A stretch of DNA of 64,000 nt from Perkinsus chesapeaki ATCC PRA-425 (taxonomy: Eukaryota > Protista > Perkinsozoa). Shown here one piece after another: positions 5,366-16,986 of the stretch. The DNA lies in assembly GCA_013115145.1 (NCBI GenBank), contig JAAPAO010000062.1, positions 1-64,000 on the forward strand, in the 5' to 3' direction. How positions within the stretch are numbered: position 1 is the first letter of the stretch; each line of letters begins with the position of its first letter. The translations under genes were made by a program, and so were the position numbers. The notes beneath the pieces are model-generated. The model was not told the origin of the DNA. It did not search any database and was given only the letters and a program-made list of their open reading frames with translations.

Positions 5366-7340
5366 CTATTGGGTGATCACACTGGCATCCTTCCAATCCA
5401 ATAATCTATAGATGTCCCCGTTACTCTGGAATATATCAGCAACGTGAGGTACTTTATCATACCTGAGAGTAATGCAGCAGCATTCAACAGTGAACTGCAA
5501 CTTTACCCTCTAGCAAGTCCAACAAGAACGGCAGCATTGCCTTGTCGTCCGTGGTCACCTGCTTTGCTGGCAAGATTATAATACTTCTCTAGTAATGATG
5601 TTGCTCTTCTCTAACACGGGGGATAGTATCAACAAAGTGTTCTGACACGATTACATCCTCTTCATTGAAGAGCAGCACCGACAGATCTAGACAGGCATCA
5701 GCGGCCAAGGTGATCTCGCCTGCCTTCTCCGCGACAACTTCGAGGTGCTCTAACTCGACAATAGCGGCATCTCTGAAGGTAATGCTTCAACCGGAGAGAT
5801 GTAGCCTTATTCACACACCTGTCTCCGAGTTTCTGGTATATCTTACCAAGCTCCGCTCGAGCTGCTGCCTCATTTTTGAGATGCCCTAAATGTTGAGAAA
5901 TATCTAGATATCGTCGTTGAAGTGGTAGAGCCTCTTCGAACATGCCGGCTTCCACCCTACATAACAGTTGGCTAGCAAAGCCCCTTGTTCTTTATACTAC
6001 ATAGAAACCCCCAGTTTATAACTGGCCGCTCCTTCAACCGCTTCATCGCAGCTTAATTTACCACATTCGAGAGCTCGCTGATAACATCCCATCGGAGACC
6101 ATTCTCTTCCCGCGACGACCAACTCCTCTGAATGACCCATAAAGGCCAGTGCGTGCCTTTCAACGCCCCACCTGACGACTGCTCGATCTCCTCTGACGGA
6201 TTGCCAAGAAAGAAATCATCATCACCAGCCAAACGCCTAGAAAGAGGGCTGTGGCAGATGAGGAAAGAGAATTGAATACTCACAGGTACAACGTGGCGAG
6301 ATCTGCTGCTATTTTGTAGCTTATAGGGGCAACACTTGCAGCATCCTGCTGGGGCCCACTAGCCAAGTCGAGAGCATGCTCCAAAACGACGATTGCTCCC
6401 ATTAAGTCTTGTAGCTCAGCCTTTATAGATCCTATTCGAAGCTTGCCTTTACGGGCAGAAGGGCCAGACAGGATACTACCTAGCTTATAAAAGGCTTCCG
6501 AAGCAACTGATGCATCACACTCCGAGTCGACCAAGTTCGCCGAACGATTGCAAAAATACAATGCTGCTGGGAGATCGCCTTCCTCGTGAAGATAACTGCA
6601 ACGCAGATGTGAACTGGCGGTGGGTGACGAGCGTTACTCGGCAAGGCTGGAGTACTGTCTTAGGGCCTCTAGACGTTGACCGCCCAAAAGATGCTCTTCA
6701 GCTTTGGATAAGCCGGAGCTTAGATAGGAGAGATTAACAGAGGTAGAAGAGCTCACACTGACAAGGTGAAATGTTGCCAATCCGTAGACAAAATACCTCA
6801 TTTTCGAGTTCTCATCTCTTTGCGTGAAATAGGTGAAGTCGATGAACGATCTATGAAAGGATAGGGCTATGCAGTAAAAGAAGGGCTACTGCGGGTATCC
6901 TCCAAGGAGCAGCTCCAGAGAGATATCTTCGCTCGATGCGTGACCTTTGCTCGTTAACTCGACACTGGTATTGGAAGAGTTCTCGGCCTGAATATCCAAG
7001 GTCAACTGAGTAAGATACAATCAAGCTCAACATAATGCCAGCTTTGGAGGACGTCCTCACCACATCCATCTGATGACCAGCCAGTTTTCCATTATCAGAT
7101 TTCTCCTCGATTCGTTCGCCTTCTTCCGTCATAAGAATGAACCACTCAGCTGTACGAGTATGCAACGAAGTTGCGCAGTTTGTTGCGCGCGGCAAAATGA
7201 TCTATAGATTATTAGCCGTAACACAAAGCTATCCGAATGAAGCTGTCTCCATGGGATCTCAATCACCTGCTTGGCCACGTCGATGGTCGAATACTCGGCT
7301 TAGGACTTCTCCGGGGCTACTTGGTAGGGGCACGAGGCTC
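5366..7340 (-). CDS. Multi-exon TPR protein, TTC29-like (start approximate)
   Basis: TPR-like helices EAFYKLGSIL, ALPLQRRYLDISQHLGHLKNEAAARAELGKIYQKLG. The last exon SNGDIYRLLDWKDASVITQ* resembles the TTC29 C-terminal LLxWK motif. Confidence 0.55.
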
Positions 7341-7836: not shown

Positions 7837-10800
7837 ATGAGTAGTGCTACACCGGGACAGCAACAACAACATCTAGGATCGGACGGAAGTGATTCTCATC
7901 TTTCTGCTGGGGAGGGAGGAGCTCCTAGCTCCAGAAGTGATGCACAGGACCGACTTGCGAGTTCTGGTAATTCTGGTTTGGATTCATTTTGGGGCGTAAT
8001 GATGCTTGCGTAGTCGACTCAGTTTTATGTGAGAAACTGTTTTGAGCGCCTTTAAAAAGTAGAAGTTTGCCGCGTCACGCTTTAGGATGCGCTGATGGCC
8101 ACACGAGGAAACGGTTCCTCCTGGGGCTCTATGCGAAATAAACAACTTTTATATGGTTCAAATGGGAACTTCTGGGCTTACTAATCGCTGGAGTGAATCT
8201 GGTAACGATTTTCTAGGTGGGGGTTCAGGAGGCGCCCAACCGTCCGGAGGGCCAAGACGCCGAGCGGAGCTTCCGGAGACGATAAGGACCTTTCTCGACC
8301 GACCGGATGAGGTTGCTAGAGATGATGTTAGGTAGTCTGGTGGGGTTATGGATGAGATTTGGGAGAATTTTGGTACTATTTAGGACGATAATAAATAATT
8401 TCGAGAAGACCCAATTGGTAGAGCTACTGGCGCATGCTTCCACGATAAGCAGGGAAGTTCGAGATGCCCTAAGGGCAGTTGTTGGAAGCAATGCGACCTT
8501 CAGGAGGCTGCTTGTGAGAAATATAAGGTTATATCGGGCAGATATTAGCTGGAGTGGTAGCAAGGGTGTTCTTTGTCAGTTTTCAAAGCTCCAGCGATAC
8601 CGTTAAAAACGCTCTAGGAAAATTTGGGATGATCGAGGAGGTGAGAATCTCAATCGACTCTTTAGCACGGAACTCCTTATGGTGGTTTAGGGAACTGTCG
8701 TATACGATCGGCACACAGGGCGAAGTAAGGGCTTTGCATTTGTTACATTTGAAAGAGTTGAAAGTGCATGTGAAGCAGTGAGCTGCTCCAACCAAGGAAA
8801 AGTAGTAGGAAGAGGATCGGTCAGAGGGTGTATAAGTTTCTAGATTTATCTTGATGGCCGACAATTGATTCTCAAGTTCGCGGCGGACAAGATTGATCAT
8901 GATCAGCAAATGGGAGTTGTGCAAGGTAAGTTTTTCATTGTTAGCGGAGCGAAGCATTTTTGCGTTTTAGCACTTCCGAGCGCTGGTGAGAGAGAAAGAT
9001 CCGTTGATGTAATAGGCGGGATAGGGAAGGGTGGCTATGAAGGATGGCTGTTAGGTGTCCGCAGCCTCTTCTGGCGGTGGCGGCGGTGGAACAGCAGGTG
9101 CTGCTGCTGCGGGAGGAGGAGGTCTATCCGCCTCTGAAGGAGGCGGTGGGAATAAGGGAACCTACTCTAATCAGAGTATGCGTAAATTGTTCGTTTATAA
9201 TCTAGCACCGTACACTACGTCAGAGACATTAAGAGTAATAAGTTGGTGGTGATGATGGTTATTATTATTGTCTGTACTATAGGAAGTATTTGGTAAATAT
9301 GGTCCGATGGATGAGTGCATAGTTGTGTACGATTCTGCCGGTAAAAGCAAACGTTATGCGTTTGTCACGTACAGTAATGTAGAAGATGCTTGGGCTTGCT
9401 TGGAAGTAGTAGTAGTCGTATTATATATTAATAAGGTATCGGACTTTATATGTAGGAACCTCATAAGACAGTTGATGGTCGAATGACATTCACTCATTTG
9501 GCGTCGGAGGGGAGCAGTAATAGCGCTGCATCTGGAGGAGCAGGAGGAGGAGGTGGTGAGGGTTTATTTAAATGTATGGTGTGGGATTCGAACCGGAGTG
9601 GTTTTAGGTGGAGAGTATGGTAGTCGTAGATCTCGCAGCAATTTTGCGGGGACGTCGAGGCCGCCTAGAGGGCATTCGCCGCCGGGTAGGAGCAGTGGTA
9701 TGCCGCGGAGTGGATCTATGGGAGGTGGCGACAGAACGCCTGTAGGGAAAGGCTTCAGGAAAGGGTAAGTAAAGATGGGCTAATGGTATGATTCACGGCT
9801 CTCATCCCAGAGGCGGTGGTTCGATCCTTGGTATATTCTTTTGTCAGATATCCAGGTGGCCCGCCACCGCAGGTTGCATCGCACGCAGGCTCGATGCGAG
9901 CACCTCAACAACAACAGCAACATGAAGCTTCCATGATGGTAAGTTGCGGACCGTCTATGGAGGTGGTATCTGTAATTCAGGATTTACCCATTCAGCGAGG
10001 AGAAAGGTCACCAATGTCACCACAACGACATCATCATCTTCATCAAATGGATAAGCAACAACAACAACAGCAGCAAGTGAGTGTTTATTATTGTTAGACT
10101 GCTGGGGCGGCGGCGGCGCAAAATATATAAATTCGAAAAGTCCTTTTTCACGCGGCAGCTCGTCATCGTCAGACCACCGCCATAACGACCCCACTAGGAG
10201 GAAGCGGAGTCGGTAGTGGAAACCCACTTCAACAACAACAACCGCCGGCATGGTCACCTGGCCCTGTCGGCAGTAGTAGCAGCAGCGGTCGTGGTCATCA
10301 TCAAGGAGCTATTCCACCCTATCCTTCTGAATATTACTATTCTGGTGGCTCTCCGGGGCCATGGGGTCCAATATTTTGAACACAGCAGCAGCAGCGGCAA
10401 CGTTGTTGTTAATGATCGTGTCATTTCTGTTTATTACGATTTGCTTACGTAAACTATCGTTTGCCCAACATCCCGCATATGATGATAGTACCATCAACAT
10501 CACACACTTCGTCAGTAGCACCACCTCTACCCTTTCGGTTGTAGATAAGTGTGCTGACTACCCTGCTGCTTGGTAATTGTTATCGTTGTTGGTGATGATG
10601 ATGTCTCATTGCTATAATTACATTACCATTATTATCCCTCTTCCTTCTCCTCCTCCTCGTCGTCTCTCCCAATCACCACCGTATAGTAAGAGTGGTGTCG
10701 ACTAGTTGTGGTGGATATAGCTTGCTGTCTGATTGTTATTATTATTATTATGGAGATGGTGGTTGTGGCGTAGGCGGCGGCCAACATCAACATCATCATC

Positions 10801-11805
10801 ATCCACTGCGGATGCTCGCATTCTCGTTTGTTGTTGTTGTTATCATCATTATCACCGCTGCCGTCGTCGTCGTTGTTGCTGTAATTGTCTTCTCATCCTT
10901 CACGATAATACTTATTGTTTATCTCGGAAGGCGATCACCGAAGGCAACGGTGGTGTTGATGATGATTGTCATCATCATCATCATCATCATCATCATAATC
11001 GTTATTGTATTTGCTTTTCATACCGTACAATAGTAGAAACCTGACGATACTTATGATGCTTATGATGTTGATGATGGTTATATTATGTGGTCTATTACGA
11101 TGATAACGTTAATGTTAAATCTTTTGCAAGATTATGAGTAGTTGTCAGGCGAAGAAAGAGCAACAGTTAATCTCAGTTGTTTGGTTATCTAGTGGGGTGG
11201 GGATCAGACACAAAATGGCACACGCGTATAAAAATAATACCGTCACCTGGGTTCGAACCCACGACCACCATCATCATCTGTTCTTGTGACCTCAGGAAGG
11301 TGGTGGCCCACGCGGCGGCGGCGGCTGTCCTGCTCCTGTATCGACTAATAGTATCAACCAATGGAGCCTCTCATCTGGCGTCGACACCCCTTCCACTAAT
11401 TTCTCCCCAACCCCCCCAAACCAAGATGGGAGCGCTGGTGGGATGATGATGAGTTCACCGTGGGGATTCACTAGGCCGGAATACACCACACGAGGGCAGC
11501 AGCCGGAAGGTGAGCAATAGCTGTATTCTGTTTGTAAAACGCTCATCCACTTCAGCTATAGGAAGCGGCATGTCGATGATTTCGGTTACATCTCCTCATG
11601 GAAGATACCAAGAAGGTTCACGATCGGTTATGGTAGGCCTTGTAGCTGAGCGCAGACATTCACCTGCTCTCAGAGCCCTTTCCCACCTGTGATGTCTCCT
11701 GGTCCGGTGGGCACACTGCCATCAGCCGCACCCCCTCAACAGCAGCAGCAGGGTAGATATTTCAGCGATGCTCCGAATGCCTGGGGTCCGAGGCCCAATT
11801 TCTGA
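7837..11805 (+). CDS. Multi-exon RRM RNA-binding protein, UBP1-associated protein 2 (UBA2)-like, with Gly/Gln-rich low-complexity regions
   Basis: Exons RKLFVYNLAPYTTSETLR / EVFGKYGPMDECIVVYDSAGKSKRYAFVTYSNVEDAWACLE / EPHKTVDGRMTFTHLASEG give RNP2/RNP1, with an upstream FRRLLVRNI RRM start. Plausible last exon SPFPPVMSPG...GPRPNF*. The middle exon structure is uncertain. Confidence 0.7.
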
Positions 11806-13526: not shown

Positions 13527-16500
13527 ATGTTACCAGTGGGCATTCACCTTACCCGACCATCTATAGAAAAGAGTATTATAGTGCCGCAGAGAAGGGCACT
13601 ATCAGCAGCAGCTACTGCCGCTGTCTCACTCGGAGAGGAACGGGTTATCAGATTGGGAGTAACTAAGCATTGGTGGAGAGACCCTAATAAACCTGTAAGA
13701 AATGCTAAACGGGTTGTATCGCGCGATGGGTAGCATGGCGAGGAATTGTCGGAAATGTGATTGTGTGCAGGTAATCGACGAACTTGAAGATGACACTAAG
13801 GCGAGGAATGTCGTTACTAAGCCATTGCATGCAGGGACGATGCTCTACGGAAAGAAGTGCACGCGATTGGATTACGAAGGCAATGGTGTTGTAAGTTGAT
13901 GAAGTTGTGGGAGGAGCGGTATGATTCTGCATCCTTTCCCAGGTGCCGGTGTACTCTAGAGTCTGCAAGCATCTTTACACACCAAAGCATCCTAGAGTGC
14001 TCCCTGGTGACACAGTGGACCTCAGTATCGAACGGAAAGTCGAATTCTGGGATCGGAAAACATCTCCTAGATACTCCCTCGCAGTGTACTCAGGAAAAAC
14101 CGCACAGCATAGATTTTCGTTATCTCAGTCAAACTGGTGTGAAACCCAGTGAGCTTCGAGTTGCCGAGGTTCCTTGTAAGCACTTTGCTGAGGGCTGCGG
14201 GGGCTGCAGGATCCTACCACTAAAATACGAAGAGCAGGTAAGCTGCCGAGCTTTCGGTCGGAAATGTTGGCTCTGATCAGGTTAAACGGAAGGTTCGCTT
14301 TCTGAGCCAGCTCTGTCCGACTCAACCTCTAGAATTCCATAAGTCAACCTCGGAGCTTGGATTCCGTAAGGCTAATGTTACTTCGTTATTTTTTGACGTT
14401 GTTTTATGTCGTCGCGCCTGTCGAATCTGGGTGTCTCCAATCTGGAGGAACGACTTCTTCTTCGGTGTGCACTGGAAGTTATATTGTCATCCACGCATTG
14501 ACGCTATAGCATAACGAATTACGTTATGACGCCGGAAGAATGTATGATATGTATTCCTAGAAATGCAATTAAACAGGTTGAAGCTGCAATGTTGCGTACG
14601 TATGAAACTATGTATAATCCATCTCGTGCTCTAAATCCCTGCTGTCCTCTTCGATACTGCTCAGAGAACGGCAGTAGGTAGTTAATTTATCTATCATCGT
14701 TTACTAGACTTATATAAGAGCCTATTGTAATTCTGCGTACATGTATGAGCGGCTGCAATTTGTCCGTGTCAGGTACACTAAGCGTGGATACCATATTTAA
14801 TGAGGCTAAAACAACTCCTGGTGCAGTTGCGCCGGAGGTCCAGGTAGGCTGCCAGATAGTGTTGCACAGTCGACTGAAATAGTCTCCAATAGAGCTCTCC
14901 TTATTAGTTTGGGTTGGCGAAGTTCGACACGGAGGAACACATGTCCATTGATGAATGTCCGTTACTGACACCTCTAGCTGCTAGAGTACGCCGAATAGCA
15001 ATGAGCAAGATTAGAGGTGCCCTACTAGACACCAAGGGCCCTCGACATCATAGACTCAGCGCCTTCAGCCCACGCAACGGACTAGGTAAGTTACAACTGT
15101 TGTGGTGCTACTATGTCGAGGGAGTCCTGCTTTTTGCAGGCTTGCTGCGGGCTCTTTGGGTTCGAGTAGATGATTCAGATAAACAAGCAATCGTTGGGTT
15201 AGAAGTGTCTCCGGGATACTCTAAACAGAGTAAGCAGTGATGTTTTGTATAACTGTAACATTAGTAATCTTGAACGCGAGAAGAGATAGATTACTAGTAC
15301 AGGCTGCCAGCATGTACTGTGCTACTGTCAATAACTAGGTGTGCTCAACGAACCCGAGACGTATACAGCGTACTGGAGATGTCCTCCTAGCATCTTTTAT
15401 TCGGGCGCCAGCTATTTCATTGAGTTAGTGTATGTAAGGAAATTATCCGGTTGTTGGTGGTATATTTTGTTAGTGGTAAGTCAAGATTTTTAGTTTACAT
15501 TATACAAAACATACGTATAGTTCATATTCAATCTTAGCAATAGCTTAAATGGATTACTATCTATCATATTATATAATTCTATATATTTTATCAGTACTTG
15601 GATATTATCATGGACTATGATGAATTATGTTGAATAGGTCTGAAGAGGCTGCGTCTACTTGCTGGTGAGATAATGAAGGAGTGTGGTGATGCGACAGTGG
15701 GTGTAGTTAAGATAGAACGCTATCAATATGATGGTAGATGTTCAGTGTTGGGAGAATGAAGTGAAGTTCATATTGCGCAGGTGTTGAAGAAGAGAACGAG
15801 GATCAGCAGCAGCAGCAGCAGCCGAGAATATATGAAGGTGATGTCTCCCTAGTTGGGGATGGCTCATTACCCATCCACATAGAAGGATTCGATCAGTAGG
15901 CTCGAGTTAATTCTAGATACTCCACCCGTCTCCTCAGTCCATACATGATCGAGGCCAGTGGCTACTACCCGAACCATAACGGTCTGAGCTCTGTATTGTT
16001 GAACACTGTTTTGAAGGAATGTGAAACAGATGATTTGATTGTGGATTTGTATGCCTCAAGAACTCATGGGCTCTACACAGGGTAGCTCGGATTGACCTCT
16101 GACGTATCTTTCATGGGTCGAGCTCAGGCTACTTGTTGCGATTGGTAACCCCAAAGTAAATTGCGTTTTGGATTCCACTGTGGAGGAAGGCAATCACACT
16201 ATTGTGTCGTCCATTGGTGAGGAAGACGCGCAATTTACTGAAGTTGCAGACCTCGTAACCGAGGACGGCATCAATGGATTGAGGATCGAAGATGAGATAC
16301 AGACACTTCTTTTAACACCCCCCGCAGGGGAAGGCATCTCTGAATTCGTACGGAATTGGATCGAGCAGGTTCAGCCGGAGCGACTTGTTTATCACAACAC
16401 TTCTTTTAGAAGCGCCACGGCTGACATTAGGGCGTTAACGCATAGCAGGGAAGATGGCCTGTCGTATAAAGTTGTGAAGTTGGTCGGTTTTGATACCACT

Positions 16501-16986
16501 CCTCATACAATGGAGTGCTCCCTGGTTGTGGTTTTACAAAGAGATTTTGATGCCGCGAAGGCCAGGGAATCTGAGGAGAAACGAAGACTGAGCAATGACA
16601 GCAGCCGAGATTATATGGGTATCGATGAGGCTAACGAAGATATCGATATTTGTAGTGATGACGAATTCGATGTCGACAAATTGGTGGCGCAGTACAGTGG
16701 GACAGGGGTATCTGGTAAGGATGGCATATACACGCATGAGGGAGAGGAAGAAGAAGAAAAAGTAGAGGAGTGGAAATTTCCGGAAAAGGATCAAGACGTT
16801 GCCCCACCGATTAAACGGGAGGAGCAGCGGCTCCCACCTGTAGAGGAGGGTGTGCCGAGGCCACGCGGGATTGACGAGGAGAGTGATGGAACTGTACAGA
16901 AGCGATGGAAACATGGTGAACAGAAAGAAAAAGAAGGCGACCCAAGTGTCCATAGGAGAAATAAAAATAAACGGTGGAGTCATTGA
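13527..16986 (+). CDS. RlmD/RumA-TrmA family RNA m5U methyltransferase-like protein, probably catalytically inactive, with a mitochondrial-type presequence
   Basis: TRAM-like LDYEGNGV...VLPGDTVDL; Fe-S motif CKHFAEGCGGC plus IDECPLL. Degenerate motifs: I IVDLYASR, IV LLTPPAGEG, VI RLVYHNTSF, VIII GFDTTPHTMECSLVVVLQR. N-terminus MLPVG...QRRALSAAA. Confidence 0.75.

What the first reader, a model, noticed from the sequence alone, without database searches (positions are those of the whole stretch)
13527..16986. Catalytically dead, Fe-S-retaining RlmD/TrmA-like protein with a mitochondrial-type presequence
Seen: a TRAM-like segment, the C-x6-CGGC motif and a fourth Cys (IDECP) are retained, but all catalytic motifs are altered. 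The nucleophilic Cys of motif VI (YVSC) reads YHNT, DPPR reads TPPA, the SAM motif DLYCGxG reads DLYASRT, and FDMFPHTxHxE reads FDTTPHTMEC. An acidic C-terminal extension is added. Known: RlmD needs this Cys for m5U formation, and myzozoan mitochondrial rRNAs are fragmented. Inference: a pseudo-enzyme repurposed as an RNA-binding scaffold or assembly factor of the mitoribosome.
Basis: partly seen in the sequence, partly recalled or inferred. Interest (0 to 1): 0.72.

Follow-up and report, generated by a model that had tools for sequence, protein, structure and literature searches.

The report
Dead RlmD-like RNA methyltransferase in Perkinsus
The oyster parasite Perkinsus keeps, under clear selection, a copy of a bacterial-type RNA-methylating enzyme that has lost its chemical machinery but kept its RNA-binding and iron-sulfur parts, so it probably binds RNA without modifying it; where it acts in the cell is not shown.

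Summary
Window 13527-16986 (+) is a 12-exon gene of Perkinsus chesapeaki. My model is identical to the deposited protein KAF4674467.1 (725 aa), which UniProt auto-names 'tRNA methyltransferase 2'.

The protein is a real but very diverged member of the RumA/RlmD-RlmC-TrmA m5U RNA methyltransferase superfamily. It keeps the TRAM-like N-domain and all four [4Fe-4S] cysteines. It lacks the nucleophilic Cys, the motif I G-x-G, the motif II acid, the D and R of DPPR and the uracil-binding Gln. The general-base Glu may survive, depending on the alignment.

Orthologues with the same exon structure and the same degenerate motifs occur in P. marinus and P. olseni. I found them nowhere else. Synonymous sites are saturated while pN is 0.23, so this is a selected pseudo-enzyme, not a decaying gene.

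The mitochondrial presequence is plausible but untested: three species share a basic N-extension with an R-x-[LF]-[ST] motif. The mitoribosome-scaffold idea has no direct support. No methyltransferase is mentioned in the two Toxoplasma mitoribosome structure papers. The P. marinus product, quantified under a fused gene model, peaks near 115-150 kDa in a mitochondria-enriched complexome. A conserved NLS-like C-terminus keeps a nuclear role open.

New variant of a known kind; moderate interest.

The parts
13527..16986 (+). Whole CDS, 12 exons: 13527-13694, 13771-13890, 13943-14085, 14129-14237, 14281-14365, 14773-14843, 14908-15085, 15140-15229, 15638-15733, 15781-15895, 15938-16081, 16128-16986
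   Evidence: All introns are GT-AG. The same 12 exons, phases and near-identical exon lengths occur in the P. marinus-like contig L001. The translation is identical to P0002/KAF4674467.1.
13527..13634 (+). N-terminal extension, residues 1-36, presequence-like
   Evidence: Net charge +3 with one acidic residue. It is not conserved in sequence between species, except for R-x-[LF]-[ST]-[AT]-A. That motif reads RALSAA in P. chesapeaki, RTFTAA in P. marinus and RPLTTA in P. olseni. The amphipathic moment is not above shuffles here but is in P. marinus.
13771..14132 (+). TRAM-like domain, residues 57-145 (exons 2-3); the most conserved part
   Evidence: pN is 0.086 and 83% of columns are invariant among three species. 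It aligns to the RlmD N-terminus by hhalign and NCBIfam. Pfam TRAM itself gives no hit.
14175..14207 (+). Cys triad C160-x6-C167-x2-C170 (PCKHFAEGCGGC)
   Evidence: Aligns to RlmD C81/C87/C90. Invariant in three species. P. marinus reads CSGC.
14956..14958 (+). Fourth cluster ligand, C249 (IDECP)
   Evidence: Aligns to RlmD C162. Invariant.
15963..15977 (+). YYPNH, the former FxQxN uracil-binding motif
   Evidence: TrmA F188 is replaced by Y, Q190 by P and N192 by H.
16044..16070 (+). DLYASRTHG, the former SAM motif I (DLxCGxG)
   Evidence: The first Gly is replaced by S432 and there is a two-residue insertion, TH. The stretch 426-446 is 90% invariant among Perkinsus species.
16315..16326 (+). 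TPPA, the former motif IV (DPPR)
   Evidence: D is replaced by T503. R is replaced by A506, which is P in the other two species.
16390..16401 (+). YHNT, the former motif VI (YVSC); the nucleophile is lost
   Evidence: RlmD C389 / TrmA C324 aligns to T531. The position is M in L001 and A in P. olseni.
16489..16518 (+). FDTTPHTMEC, the former motif VIII
   Evidence: MAFFT puts S571 at the general-base position. hhalign gaps the motif so that invariant E569 takes that position.
16549..16983 (+). C-terminal extension, residues 581-725: acidic, with conserved blocks and an invariant basic end (16948-16983)
   Evidence: 28% D/E and pI 4.8; the last 13 residues carry net charge +5. 47% of columns are invariant. 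No relatives by features or structure. Absent from RlmD, RlmC and TrmA.

Best explanation
This is a Perkinsus-restricted, non-catalytic descendant of an Fe-S-type RNA uracil-C5 methyltransferase of the RumA/RlmD kind.

**Shown.**
- It is an intact 12-exon gene conserved in three Perkinsus species under purifying selection.
- It is homologous to the m5U methyltransferase superfamily across the whole TRAM, central and methyltransferase architecture.
- All four cluster cysteines are kept.
- The nucleophilic Cys, the SAM-binding G-x-G, the motif II acid, the D and R of motif IV and the uracil-binding Gln are lost.

**Inferred.**
- It can no longer bind SAM or form the covalent C6 adduct, so it makes no m5U.
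- It survives as an RNA-binding protein that uses the strongly conserved TRAM domain and the remodelled, still conserved former active-site cleft to hold a U-containing loop of an rRNA fragment or a tRNA T-arm.
- In that role it would act as an RNA chaperone or assembly/escort factor. The [4Fe-4S] cluster would have a structural role. The Perkinsus-specific acidic tail with its basic tip would be a docking element.

**Location.** The mitochondrion is the most likely single location, at about even odds, because of the N-terminal extension. That is not shown.
For: **The gene is real and independent.**
- The gene model equals the deposited protein.
- Exon structure and phases are identical in the P. 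marinus-like contig at 63% amino-acid identity, while intron sequences and lengths differ.
- pS is 0.81 (saturated) against pN 0.23; the TRAM domain has pN 0.086.
- P. olseni exon 1 has a stop two codons before its ATG. The upstream RRM gene has its own conserved terminal exon and stop.

**It belongs to the m5U methyltransferase superfamily.**
- NCBIfam rumA E 1.2e-8 and RlmC E 2e-4.
- hhalign against RlmD/RlmC/TrmA: probability 97.2, E 3.6e-11.
- ESM Atlas model neighbours are all RumA/RlmD, with TM 0.74-0.85 by target over 433-465 residues.
- The 13 best Foldseek PDB hits are RlmCD, RumA, TrmA, PabTrmU54 and a P. horikoshii rRNA uracil-C5 methyltransferase, at E 4e-18 to 6e-12.

**Residue state.**
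- The catalytic and SAM-binding residues are replaced and the Fe-S cysteines kept, as mapped. Their functional meaning comes from PMC1904294.
- The former motif windows are more conserved than the rest of the domain: 53/73 against 52/115 invariant columns, Fisher p 3e-4.

**Supporting context.**
- A protein product of the P. marinus locus was detected by mass spectrometry in a mitochondria-enriched fraction.
- Catalysis-independent roles of rRNA methyltransferases in mitoribosome biogenesis have precedent in METTL15 (title and abstract of PMC11197891).
Against: - No RNA-seq could be laid on the gene.
- No activity, cluster-binding or localisation data exist.
- The mass-spectrometry entry is a fused RRM plus RlmD-like model, so its peptides may all come from the RRM protein. 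The fraction also contains cytosolic contaminants.
- The visible native peak is 115-150 kDa, not ribosome-sized.
- E569 may still be the general base.
- Both of my AlphaFold models are of low confidence (pLDDT 37 and 50). The second used E. coli family members in its alignment, so its PDB hits are not independent of the sequence homology.
- The invariant C-terminal RRNKNKR looks like a nuclear localisation signal.
Confidence: 0.6

Rival explanations
1. The molecule is the same, but it works in the nucleus or nucleolus, or in the cytosol. Examples would be a role in cytosolic ribosome biogenesis or in tRNA handling, rather than a mitochondrial role.
For: - An invariant basic C-terminus, VHRRNKNKRW-H, is preceded by KR 16 residues upstream and by a long acidic tract, as in many nucleolar proteins.
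- The P. chesapeaki N-terminus has no amphipathic moment above shuffles.
- ESM feature neighbours include eukaryotic cytosolic Trm2 clusters.
- The complexome fraction contains non-mitochondrial proteins.
Against: - All three species carry a basic N-extension, unconserved in sequence and free of acidic residues, ahead of the first conserved block. It contains a shared R-x-[LF]-[ST] motif of the kind cut by the mitochondrial processing peptidase.
- The locus product was detected in the mitochondria-enriched sample.
Confidence: 0.25
2. The true product is an RRM-RlmD-like fusion, as annotated in P. marinus (1162 aa) and P. olseni (1104 aa). The 'presequence' would then be internal or intronic.
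For: - Two of the three deposited models are fused.
- The RRM gene lies upstream on the same strand in all three species.
- The native mass of about 115-150 kDa is close to the 128 kDa I estimate for the fused model.
- From my own knowledge, human TRMT2A also carries an RRM.
Against: - The two fused models join the genes in different, incompatible ways. One skips a conserved exon 1 across a 3.7-kb 'intron' in a genome whose introns here are 42-408 nt.
- P. olseni exon 1 starts two codons after an in-frame stop.
- The RRM gene has its own conserved terminal peptide...YYYSGG[SA]PGPWGPIF, and a conserved stop about 230-300 nt after its donor in two species.
- A second conserved stop-terminated block lies between the genes.
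Confidence: 0.1
3. It is still an enzyme that uses altered chemistry, with another nucleophile or cofactor, possibly involving the Fe-S cluster.
For: - The former active-site windows are highly conserved in their new form.
- E569 may be the retained general base.
- The Fe-S ligands are kept.
Against: - The position of the nucleophile is T, M or A in three lineages, so it is not constrained.
- The motif I glycine, the motif II acid and the motif IV Asp/Arg that hold SAM and the base are all gone.
- Neither the Pfam methyltransferase family nor the curated NCBIfam cut-offs are reached: 34 bits against 183.55.
Confidence: 0.05

Closest known systems
E. coli RumA/RlmD (23S rRNA m5U1939 methyltransferase; PDB 1UWV, 2BH2) and S. 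pneumoniae RlmCD (5XJ1)
   Same: - The order of domains is the same: TRAM, central domain, class I methyltransferase.
- The four [4Fe-4S] cysteines sit at aligned positions.
- These are the best PDB and Atlas structural neighbours.
- They give the best NCBIfam hit.
   Different: - The nucleophilic Cys, motif I G-x-G, the motif II Glu, the D and R of motif IV and the uracil-binding Gln are replaced.
- The score is far below the curated family cut-off.
- The TRAM region is enlarged.
- There is a 35-55 residue N-extension and a 145-residue acidic tail.
- It is eukaryotic, intron-rich and confined to Perkinsus.
E. coli TrmA (tRNA m5U54 methyltransferase; PDB 3BT7)
   Same: The catalytic-domain fold is shared. 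The motif order is the same, so the mutagenesis map of PMC1904294 transfers. TrmA reads HHMEC where Perkinsus reads TMEC.
   Different: TrmA has no Fe-S cluster and no TRAM domain. It is active, and the Perkinsus protein lacks at least six of its seven critical residues.
Human TRMT2B (mitochondrial tRNA and 12S rRNA m5U methyltransferase; PMC7237155)
   Same: It is a eukaryotic, nucleus-encoded member of the same superfamily that acts on mitochondrial tRNA and rRNA (title and abstract).
   Different: TRMT2B is an active enzyme. No orthology to the Perkinsus protein was detected, and the Perkinsus protein's location is unproven.
Catalysis-independent or inactive RNA methyltransferases (METTL15 in mitoribosome biogenesis, PMC11197891; NSUN7, PMC12804707)
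   Same: In both cases the methyltransferase fold is kept for an RNA- or particle-binding role and catalysis is dispensable or absent (titles and abstracts).
   Different: They belong to different methyltransferase families (m4C, m5C). I found no described inactive member of the m5U family.

Membership tests
RNA (uracil-C5) methyltransferases, RumA/RlmD-RlmC-TrmA superfamily (COG2265, Pfam PF05958) | Significant sequence homology over the catalytic domain | tested here: met
   hhalign of the Perkinsus profile against the RlmD/RlmC/TrmA profile gives probability 97.2 and E 3.6e-11 over 336 columns. tblastn of the active fragment P0003 against the last exon gives E 1.5e-9.
RNA (uracil-C5) methyltransferases, RumA/RlmD-RlmC-TrmA superfamily (COG2265, Pfam PF05958) | Reaches the curated family thresholds (Pfam PF05958 gathering score; NCBIfam TIGR00479 cut-off 183.55 bits) | tested here: not met
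   No Pfam family at E <= 1. TIGR00479 scores 34.3 bits.
RNA (uracil-C5) methyltransferases, RumA/RlmD-RlmC-TrmA superfamily (COG2265, Pfam PF05958) | Overall fold: TRAM, central domain and class I methyltransferase | tested here: met
   The ESM Atlas model has TM 0.74-0.85 by target to RumA/RlmD clusters over residues 72-612. The 13 best Foldseek hits of my model are all m5U methyltransferases, E 4e-18 to 6e-12, with TM only 0.43-0.52 because the model is poor.
RNA (uracil-C5) methyltransferases, RumA/RlmD-RlmC-TrmA superfamily (COG2265, Pfam PF05958) | Nucleophilic Cys of motif VI (RlmD C389, TrmA C324) | tested here: not met
   T531 in P. chesapeaki, M in L001, A in P. olseni. No canonical motif elsewhere in the window.
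RNA (uracil-C5) methyltransferases, RumA/RlmD-RlmC-TrmA superfamily (COG2265, Pfam PF05958) | SAM-binding motif I G-x-G and motif II acidic residue | tested here: not met
   DLYASRTHG: the first Gly is replaced by Ser and two residues are inserted. The motif II Glu column is a gap or Asn.
RNA (uracil-C5) methyltransferases, RumA/RlmD-RlmC-TrmA superfamily (COG2265, Pfam PF05958) | Motif IV D-P-P-R and the uracil-binding Gln of FxQxN | tested here: not met
   T503-P-P-A506, and P403 in place of Gln, in all three species.
RNA (uracil-C5) methyltransferases, RumA/RlmD-RlmC-TrmA superfamily (COG2265, Pfam PF05958) | General-base Glu of motif VIII (RlmD E424) | tested here: inconclusive
   S571 by the ungapped MAFFT alignment. 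Invariant E569 by the gapped hhalign alignment.
RNA (uracil-C5) methyltransferases, RumA/RlmD-RlmC-TrmA superfamily (COG2265, Pfam PF05958) | m5U-forming activity | not testable with these tools
   Needs recombinant protein and an RNA substrate.
Fe-S subgroup (RumA/RlmD, RlmC, RlmCD) | Four Cys ligands: C-x5/6-C-x2-C plus a distal Cys before Pro | tested here: met
   C160, C167, C170 and C249 align to RlmD C81, C87, C90 and C162. They are invariant in three species. Cluster binding itself is untested.
Fe-S subgroup (RumA/RlmD, RlmC, RlmCD) | N-terminal TRAM domain | tested here: inconclusive
   Pfam TRAM gives no hit and my models are unconfident there. Against that, NCBIfam and hhalign align residues 64-145 to the RlmD TRAM region, and Atlas structural alignments start at residue 72-78.
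Mitochondrial matrix protein with a cleavable presequence | Basic N-terminal extension poor in acidic residues, amphipathic, with an R-2/R-3 processing motif | tested here: inconclusive
   Net positive charge, and R-x-[LF]-[ST] shared by three species. Amphipathic moment is significant in P. marinus (2.6% of shuffles) but not in P. chesapeaki (70%). No predictor or experiment was available.
Myzozoan mitoribosomal protein or assembly factor | Orthologue in solved Toxoplasma mitoribosomes, or co-migration with the Perkinsus mitoribosome | tested here: inconclusive
   I found no homologue outside Perkinsus. The two Toxoplasma structure papers contain no mention of a methyltransferase. The P. marinus entry C5L7R6 peaks at 115-150 kDa, but slices above 1 MDa are cut from the held table.

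The most novel reading that the evidence does not exclude
The dead RlmD-like protein is a Perkinsus invention tied to what is unique in Perkinsus mitochondrial translation. That system relies wholly on imported tRNAs and on 18-19 obligatory frameshifts thought to depend on excluding particular tRNAs (PMC9550989). A T-arm or rRNA-loop binder that can no longer methylate could act as a selective tRNA escort or excluder, or as a lineage-specific mitoribosome factor.
Probability: 0.07. Interest if true: 0.8.

Novelty: new variant of a known kind. Interest (0 to 1): 0.45.

Why it matters
Inactive methyltransferase folds reused as RNA chaperones or ribosome-assembly factors are a recurring theme. 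I found no described inactive member of the m5U (RumA/TrmA) family.

This one keeps the Fe-S ligands and the TRAM domain while every SAM- and uracil-activating residue is replaced. It therefore separates RNA binding, and perhaps cluster-dependent folding, from catalysis in a natural protein.

It is confined to Perkinsus, a shellfish pathogen with an unusually odd mitochondrial translation system. That gives a concrete candidate to tag and pull down.

It also shows that the UniProt name 'tRNA methyltransferase 2' for this entry is misleading, and that the P. marinus and P. olseni gene models are probably false fusions.

Tried and rejected
- **RNA evidence.** The run search listed only two tiny runs of the same species label, and nothing could be laid on the gene. 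Splicing therefore rests on comparative evidence only.
- **Exon-by-exon family scans.** These gave nothing in Pfam and only E 0.002-0.08 in NCBIfam. The full-length deposited protein was needed.
- **Search for relatives.** An exhaustive HMMER search with the last-exon profile found only Perkinsus plus one active metagenomic fragment. Word searches with the whole protein and with residues 57-300 found only Perkinsus. I could not place the protein on a tree or name a donor lineage.
- **PDB profile search.** The three-sequence profile was weaker than the single sequence.
- **AlphaFold.** Three rows gave pLDDT 37. Adding E. coli family members raised it only to 50. No reading of the pocket geometry is justified.
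- **C-terminal tail.** It has no look-alikes.
- **Alternative exon restoring the Cys.** None exists in the window.
- **The two 407- and 408-nt introns.** They are unrelated to each other, are not repeated in the window, and hold no tRNA-like genes.
- **Decaying pseudogene.** Rejected on pN/pS and the conserved exon structure.
- **Plastid targeting.** Considered and set aside because the N-terminus has no hydrophobic signal-peptide-like start. This is from sequence inspection only.
Full report
**What is at the coordinates.**
The region 13527-16986 (+) holds a 12-exon gene. I built the model by hand from the three-frame translation and splice signals. The exons are 13527-13694, 13771-13890, 13943-14085, 14129-14237, 14281-14365, 14773-14843, 14908-15085, 15140-15229, 15638-15733, 15781-15895, 15938-16081 and 16128-16986. 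All eleven introns are GT-AG. Nine are 42-76 nt long and two are 407 and 408 nt. The 725-residue product is identical to P0002, returned by the exhaustive protein search. P0002 is KAF4674467.1, 'hypothetical protein FOL47_009150' of Perkinsus chesapeaki, auto-named 'tRNA methyltransferase 2' by UniProt. The window is therefore Perkinsus chesapeaki, a perkinsozoan within Myzozoa.

**Is the gene real and selected?**
- No RNA-seq was available. Only two tiny runs of the same species label were listed, and nothing lay on the gene.
- Comparative evidence replaces it. A 6.9-kb Logan contig (L001) carries the same 12 exons. Over the five stretches compared its exons are 69-100% identical to the P. 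marinus protein P0004. The phases match and the exon lengths are the same or differ by whole codons. Intron lengths and sequences differ.
- Amino-acid identity to L001 is 63%. Synonymous sites are saturated (pS 0.81) while pN is 0.23. The TRAM-like part has pN 0.086.
- A third orthologue is present in P. olseni (P0007, locus L005).

**Homology.**
- Single exons gave nothing in Pfam and only marginal NCBIfam hits.
- The full protein gives TIGR00479 rumA at E 1.2e-8 (residues 114-254), PRK13168 RlmD at E 3.6e-8 (residues 86-253) and RlmC at E 2e-4 (residues 459-578). All are far below the curated cut-offs. No Pfam family is hit at all.
- A profile of the three Perkinsus proteins against a profile of E. 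coli RlmD, RlmC, TrmA, some close relatives and an active metagenomic fragment gives hhalign probability 97.2 and E 3.6e-11. The match spans 336 columns, residues 165-572.
- The ESM Atlas already holds a model of this exact protein (pTM 0.67). Its ten listed structural neighbours are all bacterial RumA/RlmD-type clusters, with TM 0.74-0.85 by target and 433-465 aligned residues starting at residue 72-78.
- My own AlphaFold models were poor (pLDDT 37 and 50). Even so, the 13 best Foldseek PDB hits of the better one are RlmCD, RumA, TrmA, PabTrmU54 and a P. horikoshii rRNA uracil-C5 methyltransferase, at E 4e-18 to 6e-12. The next family follows at E 1e-6. That model's alignment contained E. coli family members, so it is not independent evidence.

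**Residue-level state.**
I aligned the three Perkinsus proteins with E. coli RlmD, RlmC and TrmA and the active fragment P0003 and mapped positions by script.
- *Fe-S ligands.* RlmD C81, C87, C90 and C162 correspond to C160, C167, C170 and C249. All four are invariant in the three species. P. marinus reads CSGC instead of CGGC.
- *Catalytic residues.* Mutagenesis found seven TrmA residues important for the covalent intermediate and/or activity (PMC1904294). They map as follows.

| TrmA residue | P. chesapeaki | Other Perkinsus |
|---|---|---|
| F188 | Y401 | H in P. olseni |
| Q190 | P403 | same |
| G220 | S432, followed by a two-residue insertion | same |
| D299 | T503 | same |
| R302 | A506 | P in the other two |
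| C324 (nucleophile) | T531 | M in L001, A in P. olseni |
| E358 | S571 (MAFFT) or E569 (hhalign) | same |

- *Motif II.* The acidic residue of the active enzymes falls in a gap.
- *General base.* hhalign prefers a two-residue gap, PHT--MEC, which puts the invariant E569 at the general-base position. That one residue may survive.
- *Alternative exon.* The window contains no exon with canonical motifs.
- *Conservation of the replaced motifs.* The windows around the former motifs are more conserved among Perkinsus species than the rest of the domain: 53/73 against 52/115 invariant columns, Fisher p 3e-4. DLYASRTHGLYTGLLVA is 90% invariant. The cleft has been remodelled and then fixed; it is not drifting.

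**Distribution.**
An exhaustive HMMER search of 1.84 billion representatives with the last-exon profile found only the Perkinsus proteins and one active RlmD-like fragment at E 3e-4. Word-index searches with the whole protein and with residues 57-300 found only Perkinsus. The N-terminal half was not searched exhaustively. More distant orthologues with a different C-terminal half cannot be excluded.

**One gene or an RRM fusion?**
The P. marinus and P. olseni records fuse this gene to an upstream two-RRM gene. That RRM gene lies at about 8189-10097 (+) in the window, 3.4 kb upstream. I think the fusions are artefacts, for four reasons.
- The two fused models join the genes differently. The P. 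olseni model skips a conserved exon 1 across 3.7 kb.
- P. olseni exon 1 begins with an ATG two codons after an in-frame stop.
- After its Gln run and a GTAAGT donor-like sequence (read directly in P. chesapeaki; in P. olseni inferred from the Val-Ser that follows the run), the RRM gene has a conserved terminal peptide, PPYPS[ED]YYYSGG[SA]PGPWGPIF, followed by a conserved stop. This ends at about window 10379.
- A second conserved block that also ends in a stop lies at about 11640-11800.

**Location.**
- *For the mitochondrion.* The three N-termini are MLPVGIHLTRPSIEKSIIVPQRRALSAAATAAV... (P. chesapeaki), MFTCTEYARSLVRVVAAHSRTFTAAVV... (P. marinus-like) and MRRCSITLAHTQVANIRPLTTAAAAATRRG... (P. 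olseni). They are unconserved, basic and nearly free of acidic residues. They share R-x-[LF]-[ST]-[AT]-A just before the first conserved block. From general knowledge this resembles the R-3 motif of the mitochondrial processing peptidase.
- *Weak points.* Helical amphipathicity exceeds shuffles only in the P. marinus-like sequence.
- *Proteomic evidence.* The P. marinus entry C5L7R6 (Pmar_PMAR020695, the fused model) appears in replicate 1 of the mitochondria-enriched complexome of Maclean et al. It has iBAQ peaks in slices 26-29, at 114-151 kDa on the soluble scale. The held table is cut after slice 49, at about 1 MDa. The paper places the mitoribosome at about 2 MDa. The peptides cannot be assigned to either half of the fused model, and the fraction contains contaminants.
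- *Against a mitoribosome role.* The paper's mitoribosome list was built from Toxoplasma homologues. The two Toxoplasma structure papers never use the word methyltransferase.
- *For a nuclear role.* The invariant C-terminal VHRRNKNKRW-H after a long acidic tract looks like a nuclear or nucleolar signal.

**Verdict.**
The pseudo-enzyme reading is well supported. Retention of the Fe-S ligands is confirmed at the sequence level. Mitochondrial targeting is about even odds. The mitoribosome-scaffold function is an untested guess with no positive evidence. Because the family is confined to Perkinsus, it is not explained by the rRNA fragmentation shared by all myzozoans.

The best mechanistic reading is a non-catalytic RNA binder or chaperone built on the RumA scaffold. 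I found no described inactive member of the m5U methyltransferase family. Inactive or catalysis-independent methyltransferases are known in other families. I therefore rate it a new variant of a known kind, of moderate interest.

Noticed in passing
window 8189-10379 (+): A two-RRM protein gene lies upstream on the same strand, and this arrangement is conserved in P. marinus and P. olseni. After a Gln run and a GTAAGT donor near 10079 there is a short terminal exon. It encodes ...PPYPSEYYYSGGSPGPWGPIF and ends with a stop conserved in P. olseni. The deposited P. marinus (XP_002775712.1) and P. olseni (FOZ61_009479) models that fuse this gene to the RlmD-like gene are probably wrong.
   Followed up: partly
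window about 11640-11800 (+); L005 about 6660-6810: A second conserved coding-looking block lies in the 'intergenic' space. It reads SQSPFPPV[MT]SPGPVGTLP...QQGRY[FY]S..NAWGPRP[NK]F and ends in a conserved stop, with a 10-nt insertion in P. olseni. It is either an alternative terminal exon of the RRM gene or a small unannotated gene. Its ending resembles that of the block at 10379.
   Followed up: partly
L001 2800-2889 compared with P0004: The deposited P. marinus model lacks exon 8 (G-ILRRLWVRTNDSDTQALVGLEISPGCSKE). That exon is present and in phase on the P. marinus-like contig, so this is an annotation gap. L001 also differs from P0004 at the former nucleophile position (M against T), so it comes from another strain or a close species (SRR12548988).
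   Followed up: partly
window 14086-14128, 14238-14280, 15896-15937, 16082-16127: Four introns are only 42-46 nt long, and their positions are conserved in P. marinus, where they are 46-56 nt. One of them (14086-14128) splits the region between the TRAM-like domain and the Cys triad. It reads as a frameshift unless it is spliced out.
   Followed up: yes
window 14366-14772 and 15230-15637: The two long introns are almost the same length (407 and 408 nt). They share no similarity, are not repeated in the window and contain no tRNA-like gene. The equal length looks like coincidence.
   Followed up: yes
window 15797-15826: A CAG run encodes QQQQQQ inside an acidic loop of the central domain. It is absent from the other two species, so this is a species-specific low-complexity insertion.
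   Followed up: no
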